Assembly: GCF_006345805.1 (NCBI RefSeq)
Contig: NC_043008.1
Location: 50,530,001 to 50,594,000 of the forward strand
DNA from: Octopus sinensis
Taxonomy: Eukaryota
Length of the DNA: 64,000 nucleotides
Reading direction: 5' to 3'
Positions within the stretch are counted from its first letter, which is position 1, and each line of letters starts with the position of its first letter. The position numbers and the translations under genes are program-made. The notes beneath the pieces were generated by a model. The model had not been told where the DNA came from. It saw only the letters and a list, made by a program, of their open reading frames with translations, and made no database searches. Below, one piece after another: positions 1 through 59,795 of this stretch.

Positions 1-315
1 AGCCAGGTGCTCTTCCTGTTGCTTAACCTTAGTGTTTCTCATGCAAGGGTTTCTTTATTCCACTTGTCCATGCAAAACTCAGAGCTGCAATATCTATTGT
101 TTTTAGGCAGCATAAAAATGAGATTGCCATTTTTGCTCAGACTATCATGCAAAAATGTGGAATGTAAACACACGCACACACACACAAATACATACTTGTT
201 TGACCTGACAGATTAAGTAACTATGAAATTAATTGTGCTTTTTATGTGTTATGTGGTCTGATATTACGCTTTGTTTATACTAGTAAAACATTTATATGGA
301 CTGAAAAAGAATAAT

Positions 316-355
<40 letters not shown>

Positions 356-2436
356 ATTCTCTCTCTATCTCTTTCTTTTAAATGTGAGTAGCCATGTTGC
401 TTCTCTACTACAAGAAAATGTTCTACGCCAACCCCTTCTCGCATATCTTAGCTACCATCTAGCATAAGAACGCATCCCTACTCCTCCTTGGTTTGTAGAC
501 TTGCAAGTTGCATAGTGAATTCACCTGTACCTGTGTCACACAAAAGCACCCAGTACACACCAGAAGTGGTTGGCATTAGGAAGAGCACTCAGCTGTAGAA
601 ACCATGCCAAAGCAGGCACTTAAGCACGATGCAGTCCTTGAATCCATCAAACTGTCCAAACCATACTAGCAAGGTATGTAGACATTAGATGATGAAGATG
701 CTCTGTTAAAACTCTGTATCTATCATGTAAGACCCCTCCATTTTCAAGATATTGGCACATTGTATCTTGACTGTTAGCTATCTTTATTCTGAATGACCCA
801 TGGTGTCTAGAAATTTGGAAAACAAAGAGCAATTGCTTTGCCACTAGTTATTGTGCAACTGGAATGATATTTCACGTTCTCTGGGATTTTATTTCTTCTG
901 TGAAAATAACAGAATTGCATGGTAGTTCATTTTCTTTCACAAATTCTTCACTAATTCCTTTTCTTCTTTAATTATTGAAATTTATTGTTGATATCAAATA
1001 TCAAAGATATATTTAAATAAACTTTTCAATTATAAGCACCAGTTCGAAAGAAAGAGAAAAGGGCACTTGGTTATATGACAGGACTTGACTAATGTATCTG
1101 TTGTTTCCAGGACAACTGCTTTACCAATAATACTACAGAGTGTCTACCATTCTGTTTTTTACTCAGATTAGGTTCTATATATTATACCTGTACTAAAAAA
1201 TATATGTACAAGTATATATAAATACATTATGTGGTTAAAAATGTTTACAACATCATGGTTTCAGGTTCAATCCCATTACACAGCACCCTGGGCAAGTATC
1301 TTCTACTATAGCACCAGGCCAGCTGATATCTGAGTGGATTTGGTTGATGGAAACTTTGGGAAGCCTATCATGCTTGTGTGTGTTATTGATAGATTTTTGA
1401 GAGCTGGGACAATATGAAATTAAGTGATATACTCAAGGATACAATGCTTTGTCTGGTTCAGGAATTGAACCCATAACTGTATGATTATGCGCTGAATACT
1501 CTTAACATTACACCATGTACTTTGACACAATCAAGGAATTCAAAAGGAAAAGAAAACTATCAAATGGAAACTGGGGCTAAATGTGTGTGTTTAAACAAGT
1601 ACAAGTAGAATATTCCTAGCCATGGGGAATATTACCTTGCTTGGAAACAGGTGAAGGTTGACAACAGGAAAGGCATTTGGCTATCGAAAATCTGCCACAA
1701 ATTCTATCAAACCTATGCAAGTATGGAAAAGTGGATGTTCGATGATGATGGTGATGGTGGTGGTGATGTGTGTGAATATGAGACTGTTAGAACCCTTTAG
1801 TATTGTTGAAGACAAGACACCTTTGAATTGCTGGTTGCACAAAAAATGCATCTGGTACACTCTATAAAGTGGTTGGTGTTGGGAAGGGCATCCAACTATA
1901 AAAACCTTACCTAAAACCAAACACAACCAAAATGAAGCCTCCCAGATTCATTTTGGTAAGTAAACCTTTTCAATCGATGCCAAATGGACAATGGACATAA
2001 AACGATGATGATTACAATAACAACAAAGTGGTGGTGGTGGTGATGACAGCAGTATGGGTGCAATGTGTATGTGCAAATATGCATAAATAATGCTGTCCCA
2101 CAGCCTTGCTTGAGCAAACGGTAATATCAACATTCGTATTCCTTGTTGGGATTATTATGATTGGTCACTCTGCACTTTCAAAATGTGTAGGATAAATAAA
2201 ATCCCTTAAGGGCTGACCGACAGGAAGAGCATTTGGCTGTATTAATCTGCTTCAAATACATTCCTGTCCAACTCTCATGCTAGCATGAATGTTAAATGAA
2301 ACAAACCAAGTTGTAGATTTCAAATAGCGGAAACTATTTATGTATGATACTAGAAATATTGAAGTCTCTCTGAGACATTTAGAAATTCAATATTTCTAAT
2401 TTCGGTGACCAGTGAATAGATTTCACTGTAAATATA

Positions 2437-2579
2437 TATATTTGCGAAGGCTTGGCAGGTATCTCAACTAGCAGGACTGGCTACCCCAGACTGATGACGA
2501 GCAATGGACTCAGAAACATGCATGTCTTTAGGTGCTAGCCCTAGCTGGTGGGGGTGCTTGCCTCCCCTTCGCAAATATA
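2437..2579 (+). ncRNA. Minimal type-I hammerhead ribozyme motif at the tip of a long rod-like hairpin (probably degenerate; Penelope/retrozyme-like)
   Basis: CTGATGA 2491-2497. Stem II GAG 2499-2501/CTC 2509-2511, closed by a C-A mismatch instead of G-C. GAAA 2513-2516. Palindromic stem III ACATGCATGT 2516-2525. GTC cleavage triplet 2524-2526. Stem I extends about 50 bp with G-U pairs, ending in a perfect 14-bp pair (2437-2450/2566-2579). Confidence 0.7.
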
Positions 2580-3313
2580 AGGACACAGGAAATGTGTCAA
2601 GGCTGACAGGAAGCCTCGATGCTTCCTAGGGCTAAATAGCAGTGGTGTAATTCCCTTTACGGGACTGTCACGTTATGTTGACAGTATACAACCACTCTAT
2701 TTCTGATACCTAATTTGAGAAAACGAAGTGGCAAACACACTGTAGTTTAGATAATTGATAATGTGCTCAGCTAATGAGTGATAGATTTATGGTTTGAATC
2801 TTGTCATTGGACCTGTTGCCATTGTGTCTCAAACTGGTGCTGTAATGTCATATGTAATTTACATTAAAATCTTAATTCATTTCTTAAAATATTTTAAATG
2901 GCTATTCTTTTGTTGTTGTTTTTTTTTTATTGTTGCTATGTCAACTGTTTTATTTATTATATTTTCTACAGCATCACTTTCATAATTCCATTTTATTTTT
3001 ATATCTTTTGTTTTTGAGATAGTATTAACAACTGATGTAATTCTCATTTCAAAGATCTAAGGAATATTGTTGTTGTCCCCCCCCCACCCCCAATAATTTT
3101 ATTACATTATACTGGGTACTAGACTATATTTCTAGTGAGAAATACCTACTTCTGTTTGTCTTGATCTCCCTCCATTGAAAATATCTATCAATATACTCGA
3201 TATTTACTTTCAATAGAAGCAGTTGAGCAGTTAATGTTAGACGCTTTTCATCATTTGGAAAATGTTGGTTTAATTATAGCAATATATGGTCATGATTAAA
3301 TATAGTAATATAT

Positions 3314-3549
3314 TTAAGGCAACAAGCTGGCAGAAACGTTAGCACGCCGGGCAAAATGCTTAGCGGTATTTCGTCTGCCGCTACGTTCTGCATTCAAATT
3401 CCACCGAGGTCGACTTTGCCTTTCATCCTTTCTGGGTCGATTAAATAAGTACCATTTACACACTGGGGTCGATATAATCAACTTAATCCATTTGTCTGTC
3501 CTTGTTTGTCCTCTCTGTGTTTTAGCCCCTTGTAGATAGTAAAGAAATA
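3314..3549 (+). mobile_element. tRNA-derived SINE family A, tail subtype 2 (…ttagccccttgt.g.tagtaaagaaatag)
   Basis: Head gctggcagaaacgttagcacgccggg, B-box-like ttcaaattcc. TSD gattaaatatagtaatatat at 3294-3313 and 3550-3569. Confidence 0.85.
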
Positions 3550-3580
3550 GATTAAATATAGTAATATATGATGATAGTAA

Positions 3581-3792
3581 GGTGGCAATCTGGCAGAAAT
3601 GTTAGCACACCAAGCCAAATACTTAGCAGTATTTTGTCAGTCTTTACGTTCTGAGTTCAAATTCCGCTGGGGTCGACTTTGCTTTTCATCCTTTTGGCGT
3701 CGATAAATTAAGTACCAGTTGTGTATTGGGGTTGATCTAATCGACTGGCCCCCTCCCCAAAAATTTCGGGCCTTGTGCCTAGAGTAGAAAAG
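3581..3792 (+). mobile_element. SINE family A, tail subtype 1 (…aatttcgggccttgtgcctagagtagaaaag)
   Basis: Same head and core as 3314. TSD aatatatgatg(a/g)tagtaa at 3563-3580 and 3793-3810. Confidence 0.85.
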
Positions 3793-3838
3793 AATATATG
3801 ATGGTAGTAATTCTTATGTTGGTTGGTATTAATATGCT

Positions 3839-4625
3839 TTCTACTATGGGCAGAAGGTCTGAAATTTTTTGTTGGAACAGGCTGGTCAATTATGTCAACC
3901 CCAGTACTTGACTGGTACTTATTTTATTAGTACCAAAAAAGATGAAAGGCAGAGTTGACCTTGGTGATATTTGAACTCAGTATGTGAAGCCAGAAGAAAT
4001 GCCACTAAGCATTTCGTCTGCTAACAATTCTGCTGGATTTCCACCTGAAGTGTTAATGGTTCCTGACATAGGCACAAAACTGAATTTTGACAGAGTGGGA
4101 AGTTGTTGATACGATTGGCCCTAGCCACTAATCAATTCCAAAAGGAGGAAAAGTGAAGTTGACTTTGACAGGGTGAACTAAGAACATAAAAAGTTGTAAC
4201 TAAATATCACAATTTATTTTCTCTGATGCTCTGATACTGTTATTCTTTATTATGTTAGAGAAAATAGAATATTTGGGGTAATTTTACATTTCTCAATGAC
4301 ATTAGTGATAGGCACTGGCATAGCTGTGTGATTAAGAAGCTTTACCTCCCAACCAGGTGGTCTTAGGTTCAGTCCTTTTGTGCAGCACCTTGAGCAAGTG
4401 TCTTCTGCTATAATTGTTCCTATTATAGGCACAAGGCCTGAAATTTGGGGGAGAGGGACAGTCGATTACATTGACCCCAGTGCTCAACTGGTACTTAATT
4501 TATCAACCCCGAAAGGATGAAAAGTAGAGTCAACCTTGGCGGAATTTGAACTCAGAACATAGTGACAGGTGAAATACTGTTAAGCATTTTGTTCAGCGTG
4601 CTAATAATTCTGCCAGCTCACCACC
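3839..4625 (-). mobile_element. Cluster of minus-strand SINE family A copies (about 3839-4046, 4065-4200, 4425-4625) with a family B head fragment
   Basis: Reverse-complement core ccccagt..aactggtactta...gaaaggatgaaaggc..agtcgacct..gaatttgaactcag, repeated. Confidence 0.75.
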
Positions 4626-6263
4626 TTAGTGTCTTCTACTATAATGCCAGGCCAACTAAGTTCTTGAGAGTGAATTTGGTAAACAGAAATTGAAAGCTCA
4701 CCACTGTGTGTGTGTATGTGTATATCTTGTCTAGAATATCACCTGGTGGTTGTAAATGAGCATCACTGTCATACAGGTGAGGTTGTTCATTTCCAGTCTT
4801 CCATGAAAGAAATGTCTAGCTATGGGAAAATATTACCTAGCTTGAAAAGAGGTAAGAGTTGGTGACAGGAAGGGCATCCTACCATGGAAAATTTGACTCC
4901 TGCAAGCGTGGAAAAGTGGACATTAAATGATGATGATGATGATGAGCAAGATTCATGAATGTTCATTTTGGTTTTCATTCCCATAACTTCCCAGTTCACC
5001 TTCACTTGAAAATATACCTTCTAAGAAAAAAATATGTCTGGCACCTCACCCTTTTCTTGATTAATTATTTTGATGCAGGTAAAGGATCTTTAGATTGTTG
5101 AACTTTTTTGTTTTGTTTTGAAAAAAGGCAGATAAATGACTATTTGTGAGACTTAAGTATGATCATTAAAATATTTATTAATTGATTGATCAATATATAT
5201 ATATATGTGTGTGTGTGTGTTTGAATGTGTATGTATGTGTATAGATATGTGTGTGTAATGTAGAGTGGTGGTCTTTGTACGTAGCATCCCTCCCTTCCTG
5301 TTACCTTGACACCAATGAAAAAGTAGTTGGCATGCTTGTCCTTGGCAAGTATGGTGGAAGAATTCACCACCATGATAACTAACAAAAGACTTGAATCCTG
5401 AACATTTCCAGATTCTCTTTTGTTTCTCTTTCTTGCATTATATTCTGCATTTTGCTTCACAAAGGAAATATTTGTCTGCCCAATACTACTACTACTACAA
5501 CGACAACAACCGCAGCAGCTACACTATGTTTTGGAGTTATCTGAAAGCTGGCACTATAGAGGTCCTGGTCTCTACTCCCCATCACACACATTCTCTCTTT
5601 GTCTCTCTCTCTCTCTCTCTCTCTGTTCGTATTTTACTCTGTCACTCTCTCCTTTCTCAATGAGGAGTGATTTCTGTTGCTGTTCCTAAATATAGACTCA
5701 ACCATGCAAGTTCATGAAGTACATATATTTCTGTGTGTACACGTTTGTTGTACTCATCAGATCCATTGTACTCCTCACAATTCCTATTGTATTCATCACT
5801 TTACACTCACCATATCCATCCTCCTTGTACTCATCATCACATTCCTCCTTATACTCACCACATTTTGCTCTAGTTCTGTTTTTGAACATGAAACACGACA
5901 AACTCTGCACAAAGCTTTTTCATCTCATATATTTCAAGGAAACTGAAACTGTCAGCTGATGTTACTTGCAACAGGCTTTCCACATTGCATGACCACCATT
6001 GTGGAAGACCTGTTTAGTTTGAATCTGCTGATTATATTTACTGGACGGAATCAGCCAAACACACTTTGGTTCATTTTTTTTTTTATTCTGTCGCTCTCTC
6101 CTTTCTCAATGAGGAGTGATTCCTGTTGCTATTCCTTAATATAGGAATCATTTAAGAATCTATTTTCTATCAAGGCATGTAATGAACAGGTCTCACAGCA
6201 TTGCAACACCACCACCACCACCATCATTTGTCATCATAAATCAACTGGTATGTGTTGGATGGG

Positions 6264-6475
6264 TGAGCTGGCAGAAACGTTAGCACGCCGGGCGAAATGC
6301 GTAGCTGTTACGTTCTGAGTTCAAATTCCGCCGAGGTCGACTTTGCCTCTCATCCTTTCGGGGTCAATAAATTAAGTACTAGTTATGCACTGGGGTTGAT
6401 ATAATCGACTTAATCCATTTGTCTGTCCTTGTTTATCCTCGCTGTGTTTAGCCCCTTGTGGGTAGTAAAGAAATA
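6264..6475 (+). mobile_element. SINE family A, subtype 2
   Basis: 17-bp TSD ggtatgtgttggatggg at 6247-6263 and 6476-6492. Confidence 0.87.
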
Positions 6476-7249
6476 GGTATGTGTTGGATGGGATCTCAAG
6501 CTCTAAGTCTGATATCATTTAGAGTTAAGCACTCTTTAACAGATCAGAGACTACAGCTTGTTTGTATGTTCCATTTTTAGCATGGTTTCTACAGCTGGAT
6601 GTCCTTCTCAACACCAACCACATTACTAAGTGTATTGTAGTACTAGCATTATATATGTGTGTGTGTGTGTAAAAATAAAATTTCTTTCTTTCTCTTTCAC
6701 ATACATTTCAACATTATCACACACTACTGAGCATCTGTTTTCTCCCATTATGTAGACTGATCATGATTATTTCTCTGACACTGTTAGATTTTGGTAGTTT
6801 CCACTAATTAGTACTACTTAGTCTTGGCTATTTTCAACCTTACAACAATTTGATTTGAGATCCATCTCTCACTTTCTCTCTCTCCACATGCACACACACA
6901 TACACACTACATATGATGGTGTGTAAGATGCACTCTTGCATAAGATAATCCCCTACTTTTTTGTGGAAAACACAAATTTAATGTTTCATCATATACTTAC
7001 GCACTGGATATCCCATCCATAATACAGTTGCATTAGACACAATGCAATTTTATTACATTTAAGAATAAAATGTATCTTATACATCAGCATACACTCTGTG
7101 TGTGTGTGTGTGTGTGCAGGCATGGCTATATTTACTTTGATGAATTGTTTTTTTTTCCCTCCTGTCTTTTTTATTTTTGTTTTTACAGAAAATTCATGAG
7201 TTTTGGATAATAGACTGTTAGAGATGGATAACTTCAGTCAAACTTAGTA

Positions 7250-7258
<9 letters not shown>

Positions 7259-7316
<58 letters not shown>
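7259..7316. repeat. (GA)n microsatellite, about 29 units
   Basis: Direct reading. Confidence 0.95.
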
Positions 7317-7321
<5 letters not shown>

Positions 7322-8652
7322 CATGTGTGTCATGGAGATAGAATATTAAAATATCCGTCAGATTATCTTGGTCAGTCTAATTTTCTATGGGACCATGACA
7401 AATGAATAAACAGTATCAAATGGAAATGTTCTCCATGGTTTGAATGCGAGGGTGTCACATGATCTATACCATTATGTCAGCTGGGATCAGGGAATTAGTG
7501 TTGGTTGCATTCATTATTTGTTCGAAACAAGAAACCTGAGCTTCTGTCATTTTGTTGCAATATTCCAAATATCCTTTCCATAAATTTTAACAGGACAACA
7601 AACAAACAAACAAACAAACAATATGTGGGGGAGTCTTGGAAACGAAACTAAGAAGAAAAAAAAAAAAGAGAAAGAAATACAAATAATATCTAAAGAAAAC
7701 AAAAGAAATACAAAATGAAAAGCATTCTAGGTTTTGAAGCGGCCCTTTGAAGAAAGAACTAATGTTATAAACTTAATAATTATGCTCTTGAGACATAGTC
7801 CCTGGATTTTTAACACACTGACACAGAACTAGACCCCCTTCTTCTTTGATTACTCTTCTGAGATTACATTTGGATTACACAAGATTAAGATTTTCTTTAT
7901 GCATCGTTTAAAAATGTAATAAAGCTACAGCTGAGGCATGAACCCAGCTGCTGACTACATACATATGTACGTACATGTGTGTGTTTGGTCTTTTAGTTGT
8001 TCCAGTCATTAGACTGTGGCCATGCTGGAGTGCCACCTTGAATGAATCACCACCAGTACTAATTTTTAAGTCTGGTACTTATTCTGTTGGTCTCTTTTCC
8101 TGAACCACTAAGTTACAGGAATGTAAACAAGCCAGCACTGGTTATCACATCTACACACACACACACACACACACACAGGTATGCAGTTAGGAAGTTTGCT
8201 TCACAATCATGTGATTTTGGGTTTGGCCCCACTGCACAGCTGTGGGTAAGTGCCTTCCTGAGTAATTGTCTTCTTTTATAGTTCCAAAGCACTGAATGAA
8301 TGCTTTATGAGAGAATTTGGTGCACAAAAATTATAGAGAGTGTTTCATTGTGTGTGAATGTAATTGTATGTTGATATTCCTTGTTGGCATTGCAATTGGT
8401 TACTCTACACTTTCAAAGACCTGATATGGCATTGAGGTCAATCTGGTCACCCCCCATTAATTGGGACAAAATCCAGATTTAAAACACTAGATGATGATGA
8501 TGATGATGATGATGATGAATAAAAACATTCCTTATATGAAAAACAGGTAAGGGTTGACAACATGAAGGGCATCTGGCTGTAAAATCCTGCCTGAAATAAT
8601 TCTTCATTCAGCCTAATGGTAACATGGAAAAACAGGCATTACAAGAACCATA

Positions 8653-8701
<49 letters not shown>

Positions 8702-9131
8702 ATCTTGTCACAAGATTATAAAAATAACAGTATTTTGTCAGCTATGACATTAATATATTTATCAATGTACTTATCAAAATAGGTGGACCTAAAGCTAGCT
8801 CGGGGCAGGGGTAGAGGTTATTCTGCTAAAGAAACTAAGGGTTTATTAAGTCACTGTATCACAGATGGCTTATACTTTTGTTGCCATGTCTGCGCCAGTC
8901 TATTTGGCCTAGATTTACAAAACTTAAACAATCAGAATGTACTCTTCTTATAGTACTTCGCTTTGATCATAAACAGTCCTATTAAGGAGAAATTATTTCT
9001 CTGTTGGGGGATTTTCTAGCAGATCAGTGGCTTTTTCCAGTTGCATTTGCCATCAAAGTGTACTTTTAATCCATTTGATACCAACCTGCCCAAGACCCCT
9101 GTTTTTTTTTGAGTGGTACAGATTTCCTGTT

Positions 9132-9362
9132 TTAACCCTTTTGATACCAAGCCGGCTGAAACCACCTCTGGCTCTGTAGTACAAATGTCTTGTTTTACAC
9201 AAGTTTTGAATTGAAATCTCCCACCAAACCTTAGTCACAATTTATGTTCCTAACATTAGCTTAATGATAACTAAGTTATATTACTAAATCCTTTGTTATA
9301 TTTAAAATTAATTGAAAGAAACACAGAGCATCCCAACAGAAATATGGTAACAAAAGAGTTAA
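9132..9362. mobile_element. piggyBac-type MITE with TTAA TSDs
   Basis: TTAA|ccctttt gatacca ... tggtaacaaaagag|TTAA, imperfect TIRs. A truncated second 5' end lies at about 9066. Confidence 0.7.
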
Positions 9363-11030
9363 AGTTATTTAACTTAAAATTCTCTATTAAAACTTCATAT
9401 TAATTTATGTTCCAAACATAAATTTTGCTATATTCAATATTTTTGAAATCAGTTGAAACAAACGGTTGTATTTTGAGAAAAATATAAATACCAATAGGTT
9501 TGATAGGGATGTGTGTCTGTTTCTTTCAATTTGTTCACAAGAGTCATTCCCAGAGCTACCTTGTACACACTGTAAAATGATTGGTAAATGAGCAGAGAAG
9601 TGCAGAGTTGTGAAGTCCCTTTAATCCTGTGTAGCTAAGTACTATTCAGCCTCTCTAGTGTTGGTGTCCCCGGTACACTCTGCAAGGTGGTTAGTAATAG
9701 AAAGGACTTCCAGTTATAGAAACCAAACCAAATGACACACTTGAGCACCAGACTTTGGGAGCAGTGGCTCCTATTAAATGATACGGATCATGACAACCCA
9801 TCCCAGCATGAGGGGCGAGTCCAAATTATGAACTGAGCCAATGATTTTGAACTGAAATATTTATTGACTTGACACAAAACTTGAAATCAGGAAAGTGGCG
9901 AGGTTCTGTAGTCCACTCTGATTTTAAAGACAAGAGCAAGATTACTGACAACATACACTCATAAGTATTGTTGAAGAAATATAAATGTTAGTACTTTCAT
10001 AACTTCCTTGGATTCTTTGTGCCAAAAGGAGGGGGGAAAGAGAAAGATGGGGGAGATGTCCTTCAAAAACAGGTAAGGGTTGACAAGAAGTCTATCCAGC
10101 AGTAAAAATCCTATCTCAGAATTCATTTGCTAGCATGGATAACAGACATTAAAAGAAACAAATATGCATATATGAGTAAACACACACACACATATACACA
10201 ATTACTATGTTACTGAATTAATTGATGAGATCTTCTAGATCATGGTTCACTTGGGAGCTGTGCTCCATCATATTGAACAACACAGTAAGAAGAAATTTGT
10301 AAATGCAATACTGAAACCAGATAAAAATAGCACAGTTTGGTTTTTAAATCTTTCTCTCCTTCCTCCCACAATGTAAATGATGTCGGGAGCTCAACACTGA
10401 CCAGTCCACTCTCACTACTGGCCCCTACTTGTGACAGTGTCTTCAATTACTCGCATACATTGCCAATATTTAGATATCTTGTTGCGTCAATTGGTGCTAG
10501 TGTTCACTTATCATCACCTGCAGCCAGATAATCTAATTTGTTCTGTGGCATCTGATATTTGTCTTCATATGTTTCTAGTGCTGTGTGATCTGTTACATCT
10601 AATTCTATCATGTTCCAGTCCATTTCTTCAAAGCCATATTCTATGTCTGCAATTGTAAATGTGCTAATAGCAGTGATAATGCTTTTGCTGCTCAGAATTC
10701 TTCTTTCTCGTTTTCATAGGTCTCTCTCTCTCTCTCACTTTTGTTCTTTCATCTATGTTTAATTACCTATAATAAAAAGCAGCGTTATCCATCTCCTGTA
10801 TTATCTCCATTTCTATAGAGCTACAAATCATCGGTTTGACTCGTTACTTTACTATGTTACTCTGTCTCCTGTATTGTCAACTTCCTATGATTGCCAAGGC
10901 CAAATGATAATTTAATGTCCTCACTAAATCTCCCAGCAATACTGAAGAGATTTTACAAGCTGTCAACTATTCAACTGTGTGCCATTTTAGGTCATCCAAG
11001 AGGATGAAGGGGTGGAGTATTTGAACCTAA

Positions 11031-11070
<40 letters not shown>

Positions 11071-11473
11071 CCCCCTCTCTCTCACACGACATAAGAGTGC
11101 TAGATATGGTACAGAAGTGTTATCACTTGAAAATATATCACTAGATATTTTAGGTGAGACTAAAATTCAGAGTAGTTACTATCTAACACTTCATCATCTT
11201 CGTCCTCCTCACCTTTGTTATTCAAAGAGCAGGGAATAGCAGAATTGGTTAGTGTTGACGGTGGGGTAGGGTGGATTGGGGAATGCAGTGTCGTAATTTG
11301 TTACATCTCTTTACATCTTGTGATCAAATCCCACCAAATTCATCTTTAATTTTCATCCCTCTAGGGCTGGTAAAACAAGAAAAAATTGCAGTTGCCAATC
11401 AAGTAGTGGAGGGGGTTTGATCACCTATACCCATCCCTCAGCGTGTGTAGCTTTGGACCATTGTTAAAAATCA

Positions 11474-11745
11474 TTATGATCGAGGCAATGAGCTGGTGGA
11501 ATCCTTAGCATACTGGACAAAATGCTTATTATGGGTTTTATGCCTATATCGGAAACTGTTGTTGTTGTTAACTGGCAGAATCCTTAGCATGCTGGACAAA
11601 ATGCTTAGCATTTCATTCACCTTTACGTTCCAGTTCAAATTCTGCCAAGGTAGACTTTGCTTTTCTTCCTTTTGTGGTCGAGTTGAAAACTGGAGTTGAT
11701 CTAATTGACTTATCCCCACCCTCAAAATTTCAGGCCTTGTACCAA
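11474..11745 (+). mobile_element. SINE family A with duplicated head
   Basis: Head segment tgg..gaatccttagcat.ctggacaaaatgctta occurs at about 11495 and 11573, followed by core and subtype-1 tail. Confidence 0.7.
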
Positions 11746-12284
11746 TAACAAAAAAGGGTTATTGTTGTTATTGTTATTGAGTGGTGGGCTGGCAGAATCA
11801 TTAGCACACTTGTAGTATTATAATTTCGTACATAGACATGCAGTCACATATACATGTTAGCGTACACATGCACACCCACTCTCACAAATGTATGCACCCT
11901 TCTACACTATTGTTGTACATCAGTTGCTTATATGTTGTTCAAGAAGTCAGTGGAGACAGAAGCATATAAACATAGACAATTGGGAGTTTCTATGAATGAG
12001 TCACAAACTAATTTGGTGAATGAGTGTGACAGAGACTATTCCAAGTAGAATGAATGAAAGGATAAACTTTTGAACTAAGCTATACGGTTGTAATGACTAT
12101 TCAATCCTTTACTATTCAAATTCCTCCCTCAAATGTAATGCTTATTTATTCATATTGTTTTGAATCAATCAAACATTTATTTGTAGCTCTCAGATTTCTA
12201 TGATGTGATTGTTTAATTTTAGAATAACATTGTAGGGTAGGTGTGAGAGCTCAAATCCGTTTTGGTTTGGACATAAAGCATGAG

Positions 12285-12600
12285 GGTGCGTGACTTGGTG
12301 ATATTTGGCTCATGATTGTAAGGTCACAAGTTTGATTCCCTGGTGGCGCATTATGTCCTTGAGCAAGGCACTTTATTTCCTGTCCATTCCAGTCCACTCA
12401 GCTGCTAAAAATGAGTAGTACATATATTTCAAAGGGCCAGCCTTGTTATATCCTATGTCACACTGAATCTCTCCGAGAAGTATGTTAGGGGTATGCATGT
12501 CTGTGGAGTGCTCAGCCACTTGCATGTTAATTTTACAAGCTGACTGTTCTGTTGATTGGATCAACTGGAACCCCCATTGTCATAAACGACAGAGTGCCAG
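12285..12600 (+). mobile_element. tRNA-derived SINE family C
   Basis: tRNA-like head (gtttgattccc) and central tccttgagcaaggcacttta...ccagtccactcagctg. A minus-strand relative lies at about 54290-54465 (ccagctgagtggactggagc...gtgtcttgctcaag). Confidence 0.65.
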
Positions 12601-13736
12601 ATCAAAAGCACTCTAACCATGACAACCCAGCTTTTGGCAGATCTTTAGTACTATTGTGTCCCTGTTTAAAGTGTTTGGGGTTTGATTTGAAGAAAATTTT
12701 GCTGCTATGTAGGTGTAGGCATGAGTGTGTGGTTAGGAAGTTTGCTTCCTAACCACATGGTTTTGGGTTTCAATCCCACTGCATGGCACCTTGTTCAAGT
12801 GTGTTTTACTGTAGACCGAGGCTAACTAAAGATTTCTCAGTGAATTTAGTGATTGTTGCAGCTAGAGAGGTAAGAGGACGATTTGATTATCAAAGAGAGT
12901 AAAGATCAGATTTATACAACTGTGACATTCTGAGTTTTTGATTTTGGCTAAAAGTTTCTTCAGTTATAATCTGTTACTTCAAATTATTTAATATCATGCA
13001 CACACACGTATATGCATGTATGTATATCCACACACACACACAGATGCATATTATATGTGTGCACATATATAGACACACACACACAATATGAAATGTCAAT
13101 GATTTGAAAGAAGTAAATGATGAAGGAAATCATTTATTTCTTAAAAGAAAGAGGCGGAGAATCTTTTTTTCTGAAAACATGTTTATTAACCATACTTTTT
13201 GATATTGATTTATTTTAACTATGCTTGAGGTTAGGTTTTGTATGAACAAGCAATCTTATGATGCATCTTAGTGTATGAAGCATCTGTGACACATCTTAGT
13301 GTATTATTTGTTATTTGGTATATAGATGCATTATAAGATGTTATTTCTCCCTTTCTGGTTGTTGTTGTCGTACATTATTATTGTTTACAATACTTGCCAC
13401 TCTATACCAGTTGTAAATCTGGACTCATGTGTCATTTCAAGAAATCAATACCAATGGTGCACGTACACACACACACACATGCACACATTTCTTGTGAGGT
13501 TGAACATAACATGACAAACCAGTTATCTGTTTAACGTGAGGTTGGTTGTTCATCTTCAACTGTTTCACATCTTATAGTAAAGTATGTTTGTCGTGTGTAT
13601 GGCTGGGTGTGGTTACGTGCACATTAACCCTTTTAAACCAAAGAGCAGCTAAAAGCGTCTGTAAATCCATTTTAAGCAAGACGACATAGAGTAGTTGAAA
13701 GCACATCAAATTTCATTCACTGCAACAAAAATAATG

Positions 13737-13768
<32 letters not shown>

Positions 13769-14044
13769 AATGTATACATTAAGAAAATCCAGAATTGTAT
13801 GAACCAAAAATGAAGGTGGAATTAGATGTAACACTGTGAACTGAATCTGTAAGACATGCACCCAGATAAATGCAGACTTAGTCTAACATTACTGTCATCA
13901 ATGAAGCATCTCTAATTTTACATAGAAATTTGATTTTGTTTTCCTCACTGGCAACCTCAAGAACTCTGATTTATAGGTTGTGTGATGATGTTCATGGCTC
14001 TCTCATTATTATTATTAGAATAGTTTAAATGAAATTAATTAAAA

Positions 14045-14285
14045 TGAAATAGGTGGCACGTAAAAAGCACCAACCGATTGTGGCTGCTGCCAGCCTCCCT
14101 TGGCACCTGTGCCGGTGGCACGTAAAAAGCACCCACTACTCTCACAGAGTGGTTGGCGTCAGGAAGGGCATCCAGTTGTAGAAACACTGCCAGATCAGAC
14201 TGGAGCCTGGTGCAGCCTCCTAGCTTCCCAGAACCATCCAACCCATGCTAGCAAAGAAAACAGACATTAAACGATGATGATGAGG
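14045..14285 (+). mobile_element. RTE-type 3'-end element with (GAT)n tail. Further copies at about 540-700, 1615-1770, 4740-4945, 22240-22395, 43730-44420 (-), 44705-44855, 45290-45480, 46975-47195 (-), 56180-56300 and 62005-62350
   Basis: Shared gtggttggcgttaggaagggcatccag..gtagaaa...ccaacccatgctagcatggaaa..ggacgttaaa(tga)n. RTE-clade elements typically end in short tandem repeats. Confidence 0.7.
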
Positions 14286-15809
14286 TACTACATCACTTCT
14301 AGGATTAAAATTGTCATAACCATTCCTCTCTTGCATAAAACAGGTTTGGGCTTGGGCAGAATGTTGAAATTCTCTGGTTGCAGACAAATCATCAGGAATT
14401 CCATTTCTAGGCCACAATAATGTCCTTTATATTTTCCACCAGCAATGACCAAAACAGTGTCTTACAGGAAATAGATTGTGTAGATAGCTGCAATCAATAG
14501 ATTTACTCCAGCAATCAGCCTCACCAAGATTTGAACTCAGGATGTAAAGGGATGTAACTGAATAGATGCTGCACAGTATTTTAGCCATCACTTTACCACC
14601 TTTGCATTTAATTTTAATAGTGATTTCTAATTTAGGTACAAGGCCTGCAAAATTGTGGTGAGTGGGGTTTAGTTGATGACTATGATCGCAGTACTAAACT
14701 GGTACTTTATTTTATCGCCCCCTCCACCTCCCAAAAGGATGAAAGGTAGAGTTCACATCAGCAGGATTTGAACTCGGAACATAAAGAGTTGAAATGAATG
14801 CCATAAGACATTTTCCAACTCTAATCATTCTATCAATCCACTGCCTTCATCTAAGCTTATTAATGCCACCCGAATGGTACTCTTATTATGTTGGTAGTGG
14901 TAGTGGTTCATCCCCATAATATTGCTCCTAAAGACGATGATTAGATAATATTTGGAGTTAATTAAGTGTTGATAAACAGCAGAAAAAGATGAGATTAATA
15001 TCTTGTGAATCAATTTGTTTTTAATATGTAATTGATGCCAGAAGAAGAATTTTGTTGTGTTGTCTTGGAGAAAATGTGTGGCACCATTTACCAGAGGTGA
15101 CTTAACTGGAAAAAATAACTGCCATTCCCATTCCATAGTTGAGTGGTTGACATTATGAAGTGCATCTAACCATGAAATATTCCCTCCCATCTCCTCATTA
15201 ACACATGTCAAAGCTGAAAACAAACATAGAAATGTGTTTGTTGTATGTGTGTCTCTGTCTATGCTGTTGGAATTAATAGCTGGTTTCATAATGGGAAAAC
15301 TAATGAGCTATTCTCATACCTTGCTACTGTAACTGTGTGGAAAAAACATTTTTTTTTCTCTCTCTGGAATAATTTAAAAAAAAAAAAAAGAGAAATTGTT
15401 TTGTTAACCTTATTCTTCATGCTTCTATGTTCTACTTTGCATTTCATTTGGTTTGTTCACCAGTTGTCTTTGAATGTTCTATTCTTTGTCTGTGTTTGAA
15501 CCCAGAACTTAGATTTCAGATGCAAAATTTCAATGTTCTCGACTATTATGCTAAAATCTCGTAGATACAACATTTACTAGTTAAATTTTGGGATATTTTA
15601 AACCGATTTCAATAACTATTTCATTGATTCCCTGTTGATTGTACACAAGTTATTGGCATAACTTTTCTGGTCTAATTTCGAAAGGTTAAGAAACAAATCT
15701 GTTTCATGTTTTTGTTGCATCTTTGAAATATTTTTTTCACTAAAACGCAAACTTCTGGATCTTGAAATGTTTCTCATACAATTTTTTGTTTCTTTCTTTC
15801 GTTATCCAG

Positions 15810-16021
15810 GTGCTGATGATTTGTCCAGGCAAGATTTTGCTCGAGAGCTTGGTAATGCAATAACTGGGCTTAATGACTTTGACGCCGATTACTTACCTGA
15901 AGAGGAAGCTTTGAAAATTGGATTGGTACCACTGGATATCGACGATGTCCAGATGTTAACAGATCCCAATCTTGTTACTGATGCTGCCACTGAGGATTCC
16001 TTTAAACTCGACCGGCAGTGA
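15810..16021 (+). CDS. CRTC1: CREB-regulated transcription coactivator (CRTC/TORC), last coding exon (TORC_C transactivation domain)
   Basis: Pyrimidine tract and acceptor ttctttctttcgttatccag|GT GCT GAT (phase 1, G|GT). Encodes (G)ADDLSRQDFARELGNAITGLNDFDADYLPEEEALKIGLVPLDIDDVQMLTDPNLVTDAATEDSFKLDRQ*, matching the recalled CRTC C-terminus pattern (..L.ML.DP....D.A.ED.F..DR). Paralog number is nominal, since invertebrates typically have one CRTC. Confidence 0.88.
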
Positions 16022-16324
16022 GGCAACATCATTGCAGTCTACATGTAACGGTGTTTCAAGCGACATCAACATTTGTTGTTCTGCATTAGCCAAGCGAGAT
16101 GCATGATTAATATTGCCTGTCAAAAAATCTGGAATATCTACCCTGACCCTTGAAAAAAAATGAATAACAAACAATTTTTTTGCTGCTCAATCATCTCCAG
16201 TATTCCAGATATATATATATATATATATATAAATATATATATTTTTCTTTCTTCCTTAGCTGATGGTAGTTCTGGAGGCCGTGGGGAAGAGAATGCATTC
16301 TGGTGCTGTGTCCTTCCCTACCAC

Positions 16325-30789: not shown

Positions 30790-31380
30790 AATGGAATTAC
30801 TTCTAGTCTAAGCATAAAACCCTGAAAATTTTGCGGGAAAGGGGGTTTAGTAGATTACATTGACTCTAGTGCATAACTGGTACTTATTTTATTGACCCTG
30901 AAAGGATGAAAGGCAAAGTTGACCTCAGCGGAATTTGAACTCTGAAAGCAGTGGCAGATGAAATGCTGCTAAACAATTCACCTGGTGTGCTAACGATTGT
31001 GCCAGCTCACCACCTTGAAGAAATAATATAATAGAGGAGAACAGTATCAGGTGTGAGAGAACCTCAAAAGTGTGATCACTCTAAACAGAACGAAGGTAGG
31101 AATATTTTGATATAAAACTCATACGTACACACAATGTTAACTCATAAACACATATTCGTCATATAAACCGTTATAGTATAGGCACAAGGCCTGAAAATTT
31201 GGGGGAGAGGGCCAGTCAATTAGATCGATTCCAGTACACAACTGGTACTTAATTTATCGGCCCCAAAAGGATGAAAGGCGGAGTCAACCTCAACAGAATT
31301 TGAACTCAGACTGTAAAGACAGTCGAAATACCACTGAGCATTTTGCCTGGTGTGTTAACGCTTCTGCCATCTCGCCGCCT
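30790..31380 (-). mobile_element. Two SINE family A copies (about 30800-31017 and 31175-31380)
   Basis: Reverse-complement family A core and tail aggcacaaggcctgaaaattt. Confidence 0.75.
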
Positions 31381-35399: not shown

Positions 35400-37650
35400 C
35401 ACTAATCTGGATTGATATGGTTTTTGGTCAGCCATGAAAGGACGAAAAGCGAAGTTGACCTCAGTAGAATGTGAACACAAATCACAGAGAATTAGAATAA
35501 AATACCACTTTAATGGTATTCTATTCTTTAATGACAGCCAGTTTACAAGCCAATTGTATCACAGTGGCTAATATACAACATATAACATTAATGGCACTCC
35601 GTTGGTGACGACAACGAGGGTTCCAGTTGATCTGATCAACCCCAGTGTTCAACTGGTACTTATTTTATCAAACCTGGAAGGATGAAAGGCAAAGTTGACT
35701 TCAGTGGAATTTGAACTCAGAACATGAAACCGGACAGAATATAACATTTTACCTGGCATGCTAATGATTCTGCCAGTCCACCACCTTCTCCTTCCTGCCA
35801 TTCCAACATGGAACACTGATGTTAAATGATGATGATGATGATGATGGCAAGACAGAAATATATCAATCATATCTACCTTAGTACTTTATTTTATTGACTC
35901 TGCAAAGATGAAAATTGAAGTTGACCCCAGTGGCATTTGACCTCACAGTATAAAGGACTGTAGCTAAATCCCCACGAGGCATCTTGTCTAATGGTTCTGC
36001 TAATCCACCATCCCTGATCTCTAACATAGGCCCACGACCACAGATTTAGTAGGGATGACTTGATTAAAACAACCCCAATATTTGTAAATCTCACAACACG
36101 AGATATTCAGCAACAGTACTTTGGAGTAAAGATCGTTTGCCAACATAACATGACTGTCTTGGTTTAGGATGAATGTTGCTGTAATTTAGCCCTAGGAGAC
36201 ATCATCTCCAGCTGGCTATACGACATGATCTGTGTCCTTATATTTTCAAACTAACCTGGAAATTGCGATACACATATATTGTTTTGAGTTGAGTGGGGAA
36301 GCTAGATTCCCTTGCTCGAAAATATAAGGACACAGATTGTGTTGTATAGCCAGCTGGAGACGATGTCTTCTGGGGCTAAATTACAGCATCATTCGTCCTA
36401 AACCAGGACTGCCATGTTATGTTGGCAAATAATCTTTACTCCAACCCCAATATTTGGTACTTTACTGGTCCCAGAAAAATAAAAGGTACAGTTAATCTCT
36501 GCAGGATTTGATCTTAAAGCATAAAGAGCTGTAACGTTATTGCAGGATATTTTATCCAATGCTCTTAACGAGTCTGCCAATATACCCCATATTATAATAA
36601 TTATTTCTAAATTTCTGGCACAAAGACAGAAATTTTTGATGTGATGGGAGTTAGTTAATTAAGCTGTTTCCAGAACTTTACTGGTATTTTATTGACCCTG
36701 GAGGAGTGAAAGGTAAAGCTGATCTCAGTAGGATCTGAACACAAAATGTGAACAGCAAGAACAAATACTGCAAGGTATTTTTCTAACTCTCTCACAGATC
36801 AGCCTCTCTGCTCCACATAATAATCCTTTCTACTAGAAGCACAAGGCCTGAAATTTGAGGGGATTAGTTGATTACAACGACCCCCAATGTTTCAATAGTA
36901 CTTTATTTATTGACCCTGAAAGGATGAAAGGCAAAGTTGACCTCAGCAGAATTTGAACTCAGAATGTAATGACAGACGAAATACTGCTAAGCACTTCACC
37001 CAGCATGATAATGATTCTGCTAGCTTGCCATATAATAATAGTCCTCTCTATTAAGGCGGTGAGCTGGCAGAATTGTTAGCACGCTGGGCGAAATGCTTAG
37101 TGGTATTTCGTCTGTCTTTACGTTCAGAGTTCAAATTCTGCCGAGGTCGACTTTGCCTTCCATCCTTTGGAAGTCGATAAATTAAGTACCAGTTGTGTAC
37201 TGGGGTCGATTTAATTGAACCCCACCCCCAAATTTCGGGCCTTGTGCATGGAGTAGAAATGAATAATCCTCTCTACTATAGAGACATGGCCTGCTATTCT
37301 GGGGGAGCAGGGCTAGTCGATTACATTGACCTCAGTTCTCAACTGATGCCTGTTTCACTGATCCTGAAAGGATGAAAGCAAAATCAACCTTGGTTGGATT
37401 TGAACTCAGAACGTAAAAACAGACTGCTTCAGCATTTTGTCTAGCATGCTACAAATTCTGCCAGCTCACCATTTTAACAACAAAAATCCTTTTCGGGGAG
37501 AGAGAGAGTCATTTACATCAACTCCAGTGCTCAACTGGTACTTATTTCGTCAACCTAGGCAGAAATTGAATTCAGAACATAAGACAGAGGAATTAACACT
37601 AAGCATTTTGTCCAGCATGCTAACAATTCTGGCAGTGTGCTACCTTAATA
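35400..37650. mobile_element. Dense SINE family A cluster (about 7-8 copies, mostly minus; plus copy at about 37055-37260)
   Basis: Repeated aggatgaaaggcaaagttgacctcag..gaatttgaactcag cores, interrupted by the 36121-36444 inverted repeat. Confidence 0.75.
36121..36444. repeat. Long inverted repeat, 127-bp arms with a 70-nt spacer
   Basis: 36121-36247 (ttggagtaaagatcg...gtgtccttatattttc) is the approximate reverse complement of 36318-36444 (gaaaatataaggacacag...aatctttactccaa). Confidence 0.93.
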
Positions 37651-38060: not shown

Positions 38061-38429
38061 TTTACCTTGATGAGATCAATATGCTGCGCACATATGATTG
38101 TGATGCATGTACCCTCATTAGACGGATAGTCATGATGGGTATGTTGGATTTCGTATATTTGTACCCCTGTGTCACTTTTGTTACAAGCATTTACTTTGAT
38201 CTTCTGCTGTCTCTACCAGTACACCTGTTGTTGCTATACAAACTTGATTTTGAGATATTCTGCTTCCAGGCTTTGTCTGACCAAAGAAAATCTCTTCATT
38301 AATGACCATCTTGATCGTTACTCATAAATTAGTAAGGATTGGTAATTTCCCAGTCTGGCAATTGAACCCATGGTCTAGCGATCGTGAGTGGCAACACTAG
38401 GCCACATACTTTGACACACATATATATAC

Positions 38430-38915
38430 ATACATAGGGCAGACAAATCACAAAACCATTCAGGTAGATGGCCCTGCTTGATCTGTAGAAAAGGTGTAGG
38501 TAGAAACTCCATAAGATGTACCCAGTGTAAGCTTTGCACACATAAGAGGTGCAGCAATATCAAAGGGAGGCTAACTGGGAAGATAGTTTTTGTATGTGGC
38601 AAATGCTCAGATGCTATGAACCCTGAAAATGTGCAGAGAACAGCTTGTCACATTCCAAGGAGAAAAACTTCAAGTAATTGATAGTTTCTGTTATCTAGGA
38701 GACCAAGTCAGTTGCAGGGGTGGATGCTCTAAGAGTGTAGCTGCTAGAATAAGAATAACCTGGGCAAAGTTCAGAGAGATCCTACCTCTGTTGGTGACAA
38801 AAGGCAGCCTCTTGCTCAGAGTAAAAGGTAGACTGTATGACGCATGTGTACGAACAGCCATGCTACATGGCAGTGAAACATGGGCCATGACTGCTGAGGA
38901 CATGTGTACACACAT
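38430..38915 (+). mobile_element. RTE-clade LINE ORF fragment (Cys-rich finger plus post-RT thumb region)
   Basis: C.ICRKGVGRNSIRCTQCKLCTHKRCS...FVCGKC, then after a frameshift EKLQVIDSFCYLGDQVS...RIRITWAKFREILPLL...KGRLYDACVRTAMLHGSETW. Confidence 0.85.

Positions 38916-42930: not shown

Positions 42931-43176
<246 letters not shown>

Positions 43177-59516: not shown

Positions 59517-59795
<279 letters not shown>

What the first reader, a model, noticed from the sequence alone, without database searches (positions are those of the whole stretch)
2437..2579. Hammerhead ribozyme at the tip of a ~140-nt rod, sense-oriented in the putative last intron of CRTC
Seen: CTGATGA (2491-2497), 3-bp stem II (GAG/CTC), GAAA (2513-2516), palindromic stem III ACATGCATGT and a GTC cleavage triplet (cut after 2526). 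Stem I continues through taccccaga/tttaggtg, aggactggc/gctagccct, tcaactagc/gctggtggg, ggcaggtatc/ggtgcttgcc (fully paired with G-U) and a perfect 14-bp tatatttgcgaagg/ccttcgcaaatata. The two strands are not exact inverted copies but still pair through G-U, which hints at selection at the RNA level. Established: minimal hammerheads with palindromic stem III occur in Penelope-like elements and cleave as dimers, retrozymes form rod-like RNAs, and intronic ribozymes exist in vertebrate genes (CPEB3 HDV-like; RECK hammerhead). Inference: an octopod Penelope/retrozyme-like family, with this copy able to cut or fold CRTC pre-mRNA, a memory-related coactivator. Caveat: the 10.1-11.1 pair is C-A rather than G-C, so this copy may be inactive.
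Basis: partly seen in the sequence, partly recalled or inferred. Interest (0 to 1): 0.82.

Follow-up and report, generated by a model that had tools for sequence, protein, structure and literature searches.

The report
Hammerhead-like relic in a retroelement fragment
The hairpin really does carry a hammerhead-ribozyme-like motif at its tip, but it is the front end of an old, truncated mobile-element copy sitting in a CRTC intron, and this copy probably cuts poorly or not at all.

Summary
CTGATGA (2491-2497), GAAA (2513-2516), the palindrome ACATGCATGT (2516-2525) and GTC (cut after 2526) sit at the apex of a 143-nt rod, 2437-2579. The + strand folds at -71 kcal/mol (z -7.6) and the - strand at -55. 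A relaxed hammerhead descriptor hits only this site in the window; shuffles give 0.005 hits per window.

The hairpin is not a unit on its own. It continues into a ~105-120-nt structured tail (2580 to ~2683-2698). That tail recurs as both arms of a 324-nt foldback at 36121-36444, which lacks the ribozyme boxes. The copies share outer ends, differ at their inner ends, include a head-to-head pair and abut (TA)n. This fits 5'-truncated copies of a Penelope-like or retrozyme-like retroelement.

Points against the wider reading:
- No RT/GIY-YIG remnant was detected by Pfam in 1-4990.
- There is no tandem copy and no second hammerhead in the window.
- Rfam reports no hammerhead match, but a control motif also failed.
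- The core has a C·A pair (or two extra bases) at the base of a 3-bp helix II.
- The active fold is 10 kcal/mol less stable than the rod.

The element lies 13.2 kb upstream of the last CRTC coding exon, on the same strand. Nothing shows a host function. It is a new member of a known kind, of modest interest.

The parts
2437..2579 (+). 143-nt rod (extended helix I) with the hammerhead-like motif at its apex. The 5' edge overlaps an (AT)5 run at 2432-2441.
2491..2497 (+). Core box C3-A9 (CUGAUGA)
   Evidence: descriptor hit
2498..2512 (+). Helix II region. C2498 is either the extra base after A9 or position 10.1. Three pairs GAG/CUC (2499-2501 with 2509-2511), loop CAAUGGA. A2512 is either an extra base before G12 or position 11.1.
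   Evidence: family hallmarks from PMC4209133
2513..2516 (+). Core box G12 A13 A14 plus A15.1 (GAAA)
2516..2525 (+). Helix III: the 10-nt palindrome ACAUGCAUGU. As a monomer it gives 3 bp plus a UGCA loop. It could form a 10-bp duplex between two copies.
2526..2527 (+). Predicted cleavage site, between C17 (2526) and U1.1 (2527). Not tested.
   Evidence: follows from hammerhead numbering applied
2580..2698 (+). 3' tail of the same repeat unit. It has three to four local hairpins kept by compensatory changes. The 3' end is uncertain, between 2683 and 2698.
36121..36444 (.). Related copy: a foldback made of two head-to-head copies of the tail (arms 87% alike). There is no CUGAUGA box. The centre matches only 2548-2579 of copy 1.
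15811..16021 (+). Context: the last coding exon of CRTC (TORC_C domain, stop at 16019-16021), 13.2 kb downstream on the same strand.

Best explanation
Window 2437 to ~2698 is one 5'-truncated copy of an RNA-propagated repeat. The repeat's RNA consists of a type-I hammerhead motif closed by a very long helix I (the rod), followed by a ~105-120-nt structured 3' tail. The most likely source is the terminal (pseudo-LTR) part of a Penelope-like element, or a non-autonomous, retrozyme-like element that such elements mobilise. In the active element the hammerhead would process longer-than-unit transcripts. It would probably act with a second copy through the palindromic helix III, while the rod form keeps single units uncut. 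This copy landed at a (TA)n run in a CRTC intron, in the sense orientation. It is most likely a fossil. Its helix II is only 3 bp with a C·A at its base, and the inactive rod is much more stable than the active fold. I therefore expect little or no self-cleavage and no role in CRTC expression.

Shown: the motif, the rod, the strand bias, the shared tail, the second copy, and the gene context. Inferred: the retroelement class, the processing role, and the inactivity.
For: Motif and rarity.

Rod and polarity: the + strand gives -70.9 and the - strand -54.9 kcal/mol. Arm differences are 10 G-U-compatible against 2 A-C. Simulated neutral decay of a perfect palindrome reaches -70.9 in 0.65% of runs.

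Family: 2548-2683 matches both arms of 36121-36444 (blastn E 2e-9; nhmmer E 3.5e-37). The three tails share the outer end and differ at the inner end. The foldback arms differ mostly by transitions, with no strand bias (8 against 6). That is expected of a DNA-level inverted pair.

The tail is structured. 94.7% of cells are paired, and 4 of 19 pairs show changes on both sides, against 0-1 in slid controls.

Literature: Penelope-like elements carry hammerheads near their 3' ends in pseudo-LTRs. They insert 5'-truncated, often with an adjacent inverted truncated copy, and favour microsatellites (PMC8557442). Their hammerheads have a base between A9 and 10.1 and palindromic helix III/loop 3, occur mostly as solo copies, and cleave poorly (PMC4209133). 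[quoted passage not shown] Animal retrozymes are depleted from introns (bioRxiv 10.64898/2026.07.22.740005).
Against: Only one hammerhead-bearing copy could be examined, so neither the consensus core nor stem covariation of the ribozyme is known.

No RT or GIY-YIG remnant appears in six frames of 1-4990. There is no tandem array and no second hammerhead in 64 kb.

Helix II (3 bp) and helix I (very long) are the reverse of the published Penelope pattern, which has helix II of 6-8 bp and helix I of 4-5 bp. An extra base before G12 is not described for that family.

Rfam hammerhead models give nothing even at E<=10 on 65 nt. An unvalidated hammerhead-like motif of Penelope type from a metagenome was also missed, so the negative result carries little weight.

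The G-U excess could partly reflect transcription-linked mutation bias on the sense strand.
Confidence: 0.66

Rival explanations
1. It is a domesticated intronic ribozyme or structured RNA that acts on CRTC pre-mRNA, by cleavage or by folding. This is the reader's functional reading, analogous to the RECK and CTCL intronic hammerheads of amniotes.
For: It has the same orientation as CRTC and lies inside the transcribed region upstream of the last coding exon. The core boxes are intact and the + strand rod is more stable than neutral decay predicts. Intronic domesticated hammerheads exist in amniotes (PMC6155905).
Against: It is part of a repeat with another copy 34 kb away. The base of helix II is non-canonical and the active fold is 10-12 kcal/mol less stable than the rod. 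No orthologous sequence could be obtained to show conservation. Retrozymes are selected against in introns, so surviving intronic copies are expected to be inert.
Confidence: 0.07
2. It was never a ribozyme. It is a foldback or inverted duplication (MITE-like, or a DNA-level palindrome) whose loop happens to resemble a hammerhead.
For: The helices are only 3 bp and there is a C·A at 10.1/11.1. Rfam reports no match. The hammerhead fold of 2483-2533 has a positive free energy of +1.0 kcal/mol. The related copy has no boxes. The window does contain a true DNA-level foldback of the same family.
Against: The chance rate of the motif is 0.005 per window, even before requiring it to sit at a rod apex. 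Homology with the second copy runs past the 14-bp 'terminal repeat' on one side only, which a MITE bounded by that repeat would not show. The rod arms are only 62% alike as DNA, yet the rod still pairs as + strand RNA. The palindromic helix III and the base after A9 are family hallmarks that no chance model asks for.
Confidence: 0.1
3. What matters is the long double-stranded rod, not the ribozyme. The intronic hairpin would serve as a substrate for small-RNA processing or for A-to-I editing enzymes.
For: It is a ~50-bp, nearly continuous helix in a transcribed intron. This is an inference from general knowledge that long intronic hairpins are bound by such enzymes. Nothing was tested here.
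Against: No microRNA family matches the hairpin. At 143 nt with many bulges it is unlike a microRNA precursor. Any such processing would be a by-product of a repeat insertion, and no conservation data exist.
Confidence: 0.08

Closest known systems
Minimal hammerheads in the pseudo-LTRs of Penelope-like elements (Cervera and de la Pena 2014, PMC4209133; Craig et al. 2021, PMC8557442)
   Same: Both are type-I topology with CUGAUGA and GAAA boxes, a base between A9 and the G-C pair, a palindromic helix III/loop 3 that allows dimer action, and C17. Both occur mostly as solo 5'-truncated copies, form head-to-head inverted copies, insert at microsatellites, and are expected to have low activity.
   Different: Helix II here is 3 bp, not 6-8, and helix I is a ~50-bp rod, not 4-5 bp. 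An extra A precedes G12. No RT/GIY-YIG ORF was detected by Pfam in 1-4990. Linkage to a full element is not shown.
Animal non-LTR retrozymes (Cervera and de la Pena 2020, PMC7229834; Li et al. 2026 preprint)
   Same: Both involve a small (170-400 nt), highly self-paired RNA unit with one type-I hammerhead. Helix III is a short stem with a palindromic tetraloop, as in invertebrate retrozymes. Both are non-coding and AT-rich, and both are proposed to depend on Penelope-like elements.
   Different: Retrozymes are defined by tandem arrays and circular RNAs. Here there is a single truncated unit with no tandem copy. Expression and circularity are unknown.
Intronic hammerheads of amniotes (Rfam HH9/HH10; RECK, CTCL, DTNB introns; PMC6155905)
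   Same: Both are type-I hammerheads derived from retroelements, lying in the sense orientation in an intron of a protein-coding gene.
   Different: The amniote examples are ultraconserved at orthologous positions, have canonical cores and match the Rfam models. Here the core is non-canonical, Rfam does not match, and conservation is unknown.
Rod-shaped hammerhead RNAs of viroids and plant LTR retrozymes
   Same: In both, the most stable fold is a rod in which the two hammerhead boxes face and pair with each other, so the ribozyme can form only transiently or as a dimer (contrast noted in PMC7229834).
   Different: Those carry type-III hammerheads, often in both polarities, on autonomous or LTR-flanked circles. 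Here there is one polarity only, type I, and a genomic repeat.

Membership tests
Hammerhead ribozyme (type I) | Core boxes C3-U4-G5-A6-N7-G8-A9 and G12-A13-A14 | tested here: met
   CUGAUGA at 2491-2497 and GAA at 2513-2515.
Hammerhead ribozyme (type I) | A15.1-U16.1 pair followed by a non-G at position 17, with three helices around the core and helix I open | tested here: met
   A2516-U2525 and C2526. Helix I is 2488-2490/2527-2529 and continues as the rod. Helix II is 3 bp. Helix III is 3 bp plus a tetraloop.
Hammerhead ribozyme (type I) | G10.1-C11.1 pair directly next to A9 and G12 | tested here: not met
   C2498 and A2512 occupy those places. The G2499-C2511 pair is one step further in. 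The descriptor matches only when one extra base is allowed on each side.
Hammerhead ribozyme (type I) | Match to curated covariance models (Rfam Hammerhead_1, _3, _II, HH9, HH10) | tested here: not met
   No match at the gathering threshold, nor at E<=10 on 401 nt or 65 nt. An unvalidated hammerhead-like motif of Penelope type, used as a control, is also missed, so this test is weak.
Hammerhead ribozyme (type I) | Site-specific self-cleavage | not testable with these tools
   Energetics only: the active fold gives -60.9 against -70.9 kcal/mol for the rod. The isolated domain gives +1.0 against -11.5. The double hammerhead gives -26.7 against -35.1.
Penelope-like element hammerhead (pseudo-LTR) | Extra base between A9 and 10.1; palindromic 15.2-16.2 and loop 3 | tested here: met
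   C2498 and CAUGCAUG.
Penelope-like element hammerhead (pseudo-LTR) | Long helix II (6-8 bp) and short helix I (4-5 bp) | tested here: not met
   Helix II is 3 bp. Helix I continues for ~50 bp.
Penelope-like element hammerhead (pseudo-LTR) | Lies in a repeat flanking an RT plus GIY-YIG ORF | tested here: not met
   Six-frame Pfam scan of 1-4990 finds nothing. Solo truncated copies are the rule in published genomes, so this does not exclude the family.
Penelope-like element hammerhead (pseudo-LTR) | Insertion habits: 5' truncation with a common 3' end, an adjacent inverted truncated copy, and a microsatellite target | tested here: met
   Three tails share the outer end and have different inner ends. 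The pair at 36121-36444 is head-to-head. The copy-1 edge lies in (AT)5 (criteria). The sample is only three tails.
Penelope-like element hammerhead (pseudo-LTR) | Many genomic copies forming consensus families with compensatory changes | not testable with these tools
   No collection on hand holds the source genome. Two protein-space searches and a metagenome pattern scan found no further copies.
Animal non-LTR retrozyme | Tandem repeats of 170-400 bp, each with a type-I hammerhead | tested here: not met
   There is no tandem array in 1500-4000 and no second hammerhead in the window.
Animal non-LTR retrozyme | Expressed as linear and circular RNA of unit length | not testable with these tools
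   No transcript data are available.
Domesticated intronic hammerhead (HH9/HH10 type) | Conserved at the orthologous intron position across species | not testable with these tools
   The only related-species DNA retrieved (L001-L003, 89% identical) covers window 14283-16231, not the hairpin.
MITE or foldback DNA transposon | Unit bounded by terminal inverted repeats, with homology between copies ending at those repeats | tested here: not met
   Homology with the second copy continues ~105-120 nt beyond the 14-bp 'terminal repeat', on the right side only.

The most novel reading that the evidence does not exclude
This would be a cephalopod family of rod-shaped, hammerhead-tipped retroelement RNAs. 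The ribozyme is held inactive by a ~50-bp helix I until two units meet. The family would be expressed as small linear or circular RNAs, with copies in neural genes such as CRTC that cut or restructure the pre-mRNA.
Probability: 0.1. Interest if true: 0.65.

Novelty: new member of a known kind. Interest (0 to 1): 0.33.

Why it matters
Hammerhead motifs in animal retroelements are already known in thousands of copies, from cnidarians to amphibians. A solo, probably inert copy in an intron is therefore ordinary.

Two things could matter. First, none of the four hammerhead papers I term-searched for 'cephalopod' or 'octopus' links a hammerhead to cephalopods; one names Octopus only as a host of Naiad elements, which lack canonical hammerheads. 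Second, this element pairs a hammerhead with an unusually long helix I and a covarying 3' tail. If the family is large and its consensus core is intact, it would add a structurally distinct variant to the Penelope/retrozyme group. It would also give a handle on how such RNAs keep the ribozyme switched off.

For CRTC biology there is at present no reason to expect any effect.

Tried and rejected
1. Rfam at the gathering threshold over the window, and at E<=10 on 401 nt and 65 nt, gave no hammerhead family. The control shows the models also miss an unvalidated Penelope-type hammerhead-like motif, so the negative result is uninformative.

2. I looked for more copies through protein space. I searched six-frame translations of the hairpin and of its flanks plus copy 2 against 5.8 billion predicted proteins. 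Neither search found a hit, and all three protein searches are now used.

3. I tried to reach orthologous loci through the CRTC last exon. This returned only short fragments. The best (P0001, 97% identical) lies on ~1.6-1.9-kb genomic contigs of a related species that stop 11.7 kb short of the hairpin.

4. A metagenome scan for CTGATGA N8-20 GAAACATGCATGTC gave 10 loci. Six are GC-rich, apparently coding bacterial DNA (chance). Three carry an AT-rich repeat with a Penelope-type motif, and one more AT-rich locus (L011) matches the pattern but could not be parsed as a hammerhead. None is related to this element in its flanks. The two AT-rich contigs checked (L011, L012) have no obvious RT-like ORF by eye; Pfam was not run.

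5. A six-frame Pfam scan of 1-4990 found no Penelope ORF. A + strand scan of ORFs of 30 aa or more in 4946-15860 looked only for CRTC exons, and only TORC_C was found.

6. The MITE reading is rejected because homology runs past the terminal repeat on one side only.

7. The reading 'rod = simple decayed inverted duplication' is disfavoured by the simulation and by the contrast with copy 2.

8. The microRNA reading has no support.

9. The SRA run numbers of the related species were not found in the paper library, so the organism could not be named.

Full report

Yes. The sequence reads exactly as described:
- CTGATGA at 2491-2497.
- CGAG / CAATGGA / CTCA at 2498-2512.
- GAAA at 2513-2516.
- The 10-nt palindrome ACATGCATGT at 2516-2525.
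- C at 2526, followed by TTTAGGTG.

RNAfold of 2430-2585 gives -71.7 kcal/mol on the + strand. That is z -7.6, and none of 200 dinucleotide shuffles does as well. The - strand gives -55.7, z -3.6.

I wrote a relaxed hammerhead descriptor: CUGANGA, an optional base, helix II of at least 3 bp, an optional base, GAAA, helix III of at least 3 bp closed by A-U, a non-G, then helix I of at least 3 bp. It hits only 2491-2526 on either strand of the window. It hits 0.005 times per shuffled window (400 shuffles). The descriptor was tailored after the fact. The motif nonetheless sits at the exact apex of a ~50-bp rod, which no chance model provides.

**2. What the core looks like**

Read in the canonical register, helix II has four positions.

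Read against the published Penelope-type hammerheads, the picture shifts. Those conserve a base between A9 and 10.1 and a G10.1-C11.1 pair (PMC4209133). On that reading C2498 is the usual extra base and G2499-C2511 is the G-C pair, but A2512 is an unexpected extra base before G12. Physically both readings give the same thing: a 1x1 C·A internal loop under a 3-bp helix II.

Helix III is 3 bp plus a UGCA tetraloop as a monomer. That matches the short palindromic helix III described for invertebrate type-I hammerheads (PMC7229834). It could also form a 10-bp duplex between two copies.

**3. Energetics**

The minimum-energy fold does not form the hammerhead. CUGAUGACGAGCA pairs with UGCAUGUCUUUAG, so the rod runs almost to the tip.

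| Construct | Hammerhead fold (kcal/mol) | Alternative (kcal/mol) |
|---|---|---|
| 2437-2579 | -60.9 | -70.9 (rod) |
| 2483-2533 (isolated domain) | +1.0 | -11.5 |
| Double hammerhead, two copies of 2477-2538 | -26.7 | -35.1 (free dimer); -30.6 (two rods) |

Nearest-neighbour energies ignore the tertiary contacts of the core. Even so, this copy is at best a reluctant ribozyme.

**4. Rfam**

No hammerhead family is reported at the gathering threshold, nor at E<=10 on 401 nt or 65 nt.

As a control I took a motif found in a metagenome scan: CUGAUGA-U-GAUGUU-CGU-AACAUU-GAAACAUGCAUGUC. It has a 6-bp helix II, a bulged U and the same palindrome, but it has not been validated as a ribozyme. Rfam does not report it either. 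The Rfam negative therefore carries little weight for this class.

**5. The hairpin is not a unit of its own**

The sequence to the right of the hairpin (2548-2683) is homologous to both arms of a 324-nt foldback at 36121-36444. Blastn gives E 2e-9 and 3e-7. An nhmmer profile of the three arms gives E 1e-43, 2e-42 and 3.5e-37, with nothing else in the window.

Aligned, the three tails share their outer end (...GTTATGTTGRCA...ACTC) and differ at their inner end:
- Copy 1 reaches back through the hammerhead to 2437.
- The right-hand copy of the foldback starts about where GAAA and helix III would be.
- The left-hand, inverted copy stops at GAAAATATAAGG.

The foldback has no CUGAUGA box.

The left flank of the hairpin (2137-2290) belongs to a different repeat, also seen at 8375-8626. 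The 5' edge of the hairpin overlaps an (AT)5 run. No tandem copy exists.

**6. RNA-level signals**

- *The rod.* Its two arms are only 62% alike as DNA (33 of 53 aligned positions). Of the 12 transition differences, 10 give G-U on the + strand and 2 give A·C. In the foldback at 36 kb the arms are 87% alike, and the corresponding counts are 8 and 6, as expected for a neutrally decaying DNA palindrome.
- *Simulation.* I simulated perfect palindromes decayed by the same 12 transitions and 8 transversions. They fold at -53.4 ± 7.2 kcal/mol on the + strand. Only 0.65% reach the observed -70.9, or 0.9% if the better strand is taken.
- *The tail.* It folds into local hairpins (z about -5 against mononucleotide shuffles). 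Across the three copies 94.7% of cells in 19 pairs are standard pairs. Four pairs changed on both sides, against 0-1 when the partner is slid by 1-3 columns.

Three sequences, two of them close, make a thin sample. A transcription-linked mutation bias could also add G-U pairs on the sense strand. All the signals nonetheless point to the same polarity as the hammerhead.

**7. What it most likely is**

Several features together describe a retroelement copied from its 3' end: a common 3' end with variable 5' ends, a head-to-head pair of truncated copies, an edge in a microsatellite, a structured 3' tail, and a hammerhead ~160-170 nt from the 3' end.

Among known classes this fits Penelope-like elements. 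Their insertions are 5'-truncated, often carry an adjacent inverted truncated copy, favour microsatellites, and have hammerheads near the 3' end in pseudo-LTRs (PMC8557442). Most of their hammerheads are found as solo motifs with low activity (PMC4209133). It also fits the non-autonomous retrozymes thought to derive from them, which are 170-400 nt, highly self-paired RNAs (PMC7229834; 2026 preprint).

Membership is not proven, for four reasons:
- No RT/GIY-YIG remnant appears in six frames of 1-4990.
- There is no tandem array and no second hammerhead.
- The helix proportions are the reverse of the published Penelope pattern.
- I could not reach any other genomic copy.

**8. Gene context**

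The last coding exon of CRTC is 15811-16021 on the + strand. It follows an acceptor ...ttatccag| and carries the TORC_C domain (Pfam 7.7e-14, stop at 16019-16021).

No other Pfam-detectable exon lies on the + strand between 1 and 15810. The hairpin is therefore 13.2 kb upstream of that exon on the sense strand. This is consistent with the last intron, but middle exons of CRTC may escape Pfam and the upstream exon was not located.

A related species is 89% identical over 14283-16231, but those contigs do not reach the hairpin. The organism could not be named. The best named relative of the exon is a bivalve protein at 66% identity.

**9. Function**

I commit to the following. In the parent element the hammerhead processes longer-than-unit transcripts, probably through pairing of two copies at the palindrome. 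The rod keeps single units intact. This much is inference from the literature. The copy in the CRTC intron is a fossil with little or no activity, which is inference from the core defect and the energetics. Retrozymes are depleted from introns in Xenopus, which suggests that active sense-strand copies in genes are selected against. That fits an inert survivor.

**10. Verdict**

It is a new member of a known kind (hammerhead-bearing retroelement relics), with an unusually long helix I and a covarying tail that would deserve a genome-wide look. Interest is modest.

Noticed in passing
window 36121-36444: A 324-nt foldback (-222 kcal/mol). Its arms are 87% alike and are two head-to-head copies of the tail that follows the hammerhead hairpin. 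It has no ribozyme boxes.
   Followed up: yes
window 2580-2698, 36318-36444, 36121-36247(-): The shared tail keeps three to four local hairpins through compensatory changes. Four of 19 pairs changed on both sides, against 0-1 in slid controls.
   Followed up: partly
window 59517-59795 (-) and 42934-43176 (-): The ORF at 59517-59795 (-) matches the triose-phosphate-transporter / SLC35-type family (Pfam TPT 3.4e-24). The ORF at 42934-43176 (-) looks like the same family by eye and was not scanned. Together they suggest a neighbouring gene on the opposite strand, 3' end to 3' end with CRTC.
   Followed up: partly
window 2348-2403: A small AT-rich hairpin just upstream of the element, with weak, sub-threshold microRNA-like Rfam scores (mir-4680 E 0.32, mir-725 E 1.5).
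   Followed up: no
window 2137-2290 and 8375-8626: Two copies of another short repeat (71-80% identity). One abuts the region left of the hammerhead element.
   Followed up: partly
window e.g. 4444-4660, 30833-31050, 36860-37065, 42042-42256, 47532-47920: About twenty copies, on both strands, of a ~200-nt SINE-like repeat containing ...GGAATTTGAACTCAGAAC....
   Followed up: no
window ~34250-34560 (-) and ~38400-38900: Open frames that look like fragments of a non-LTR retrotransposon reverse transcriptase. Not checked against Pfam.
   Followed up: no
L004 443-479, L009 572-608, L012 3212-3248 (-): Metagenome contigs of an AT-rich, probably eukaryotic genome. They carry a repeat with a Penelope-type hammerhead-like motif (bulged U, 6-bp helix II) and the same CAUGCAUG palindrome. 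Rfam does not report it.
   Followed up: partly
L001-L003 (Logan SRR11869391, SRR11869385, SRR11869384): Genomic contigs of a related species, 89% identical to window 14283-16231, with a CRTC last exon 97% identical in protein.
   Followed up: partly
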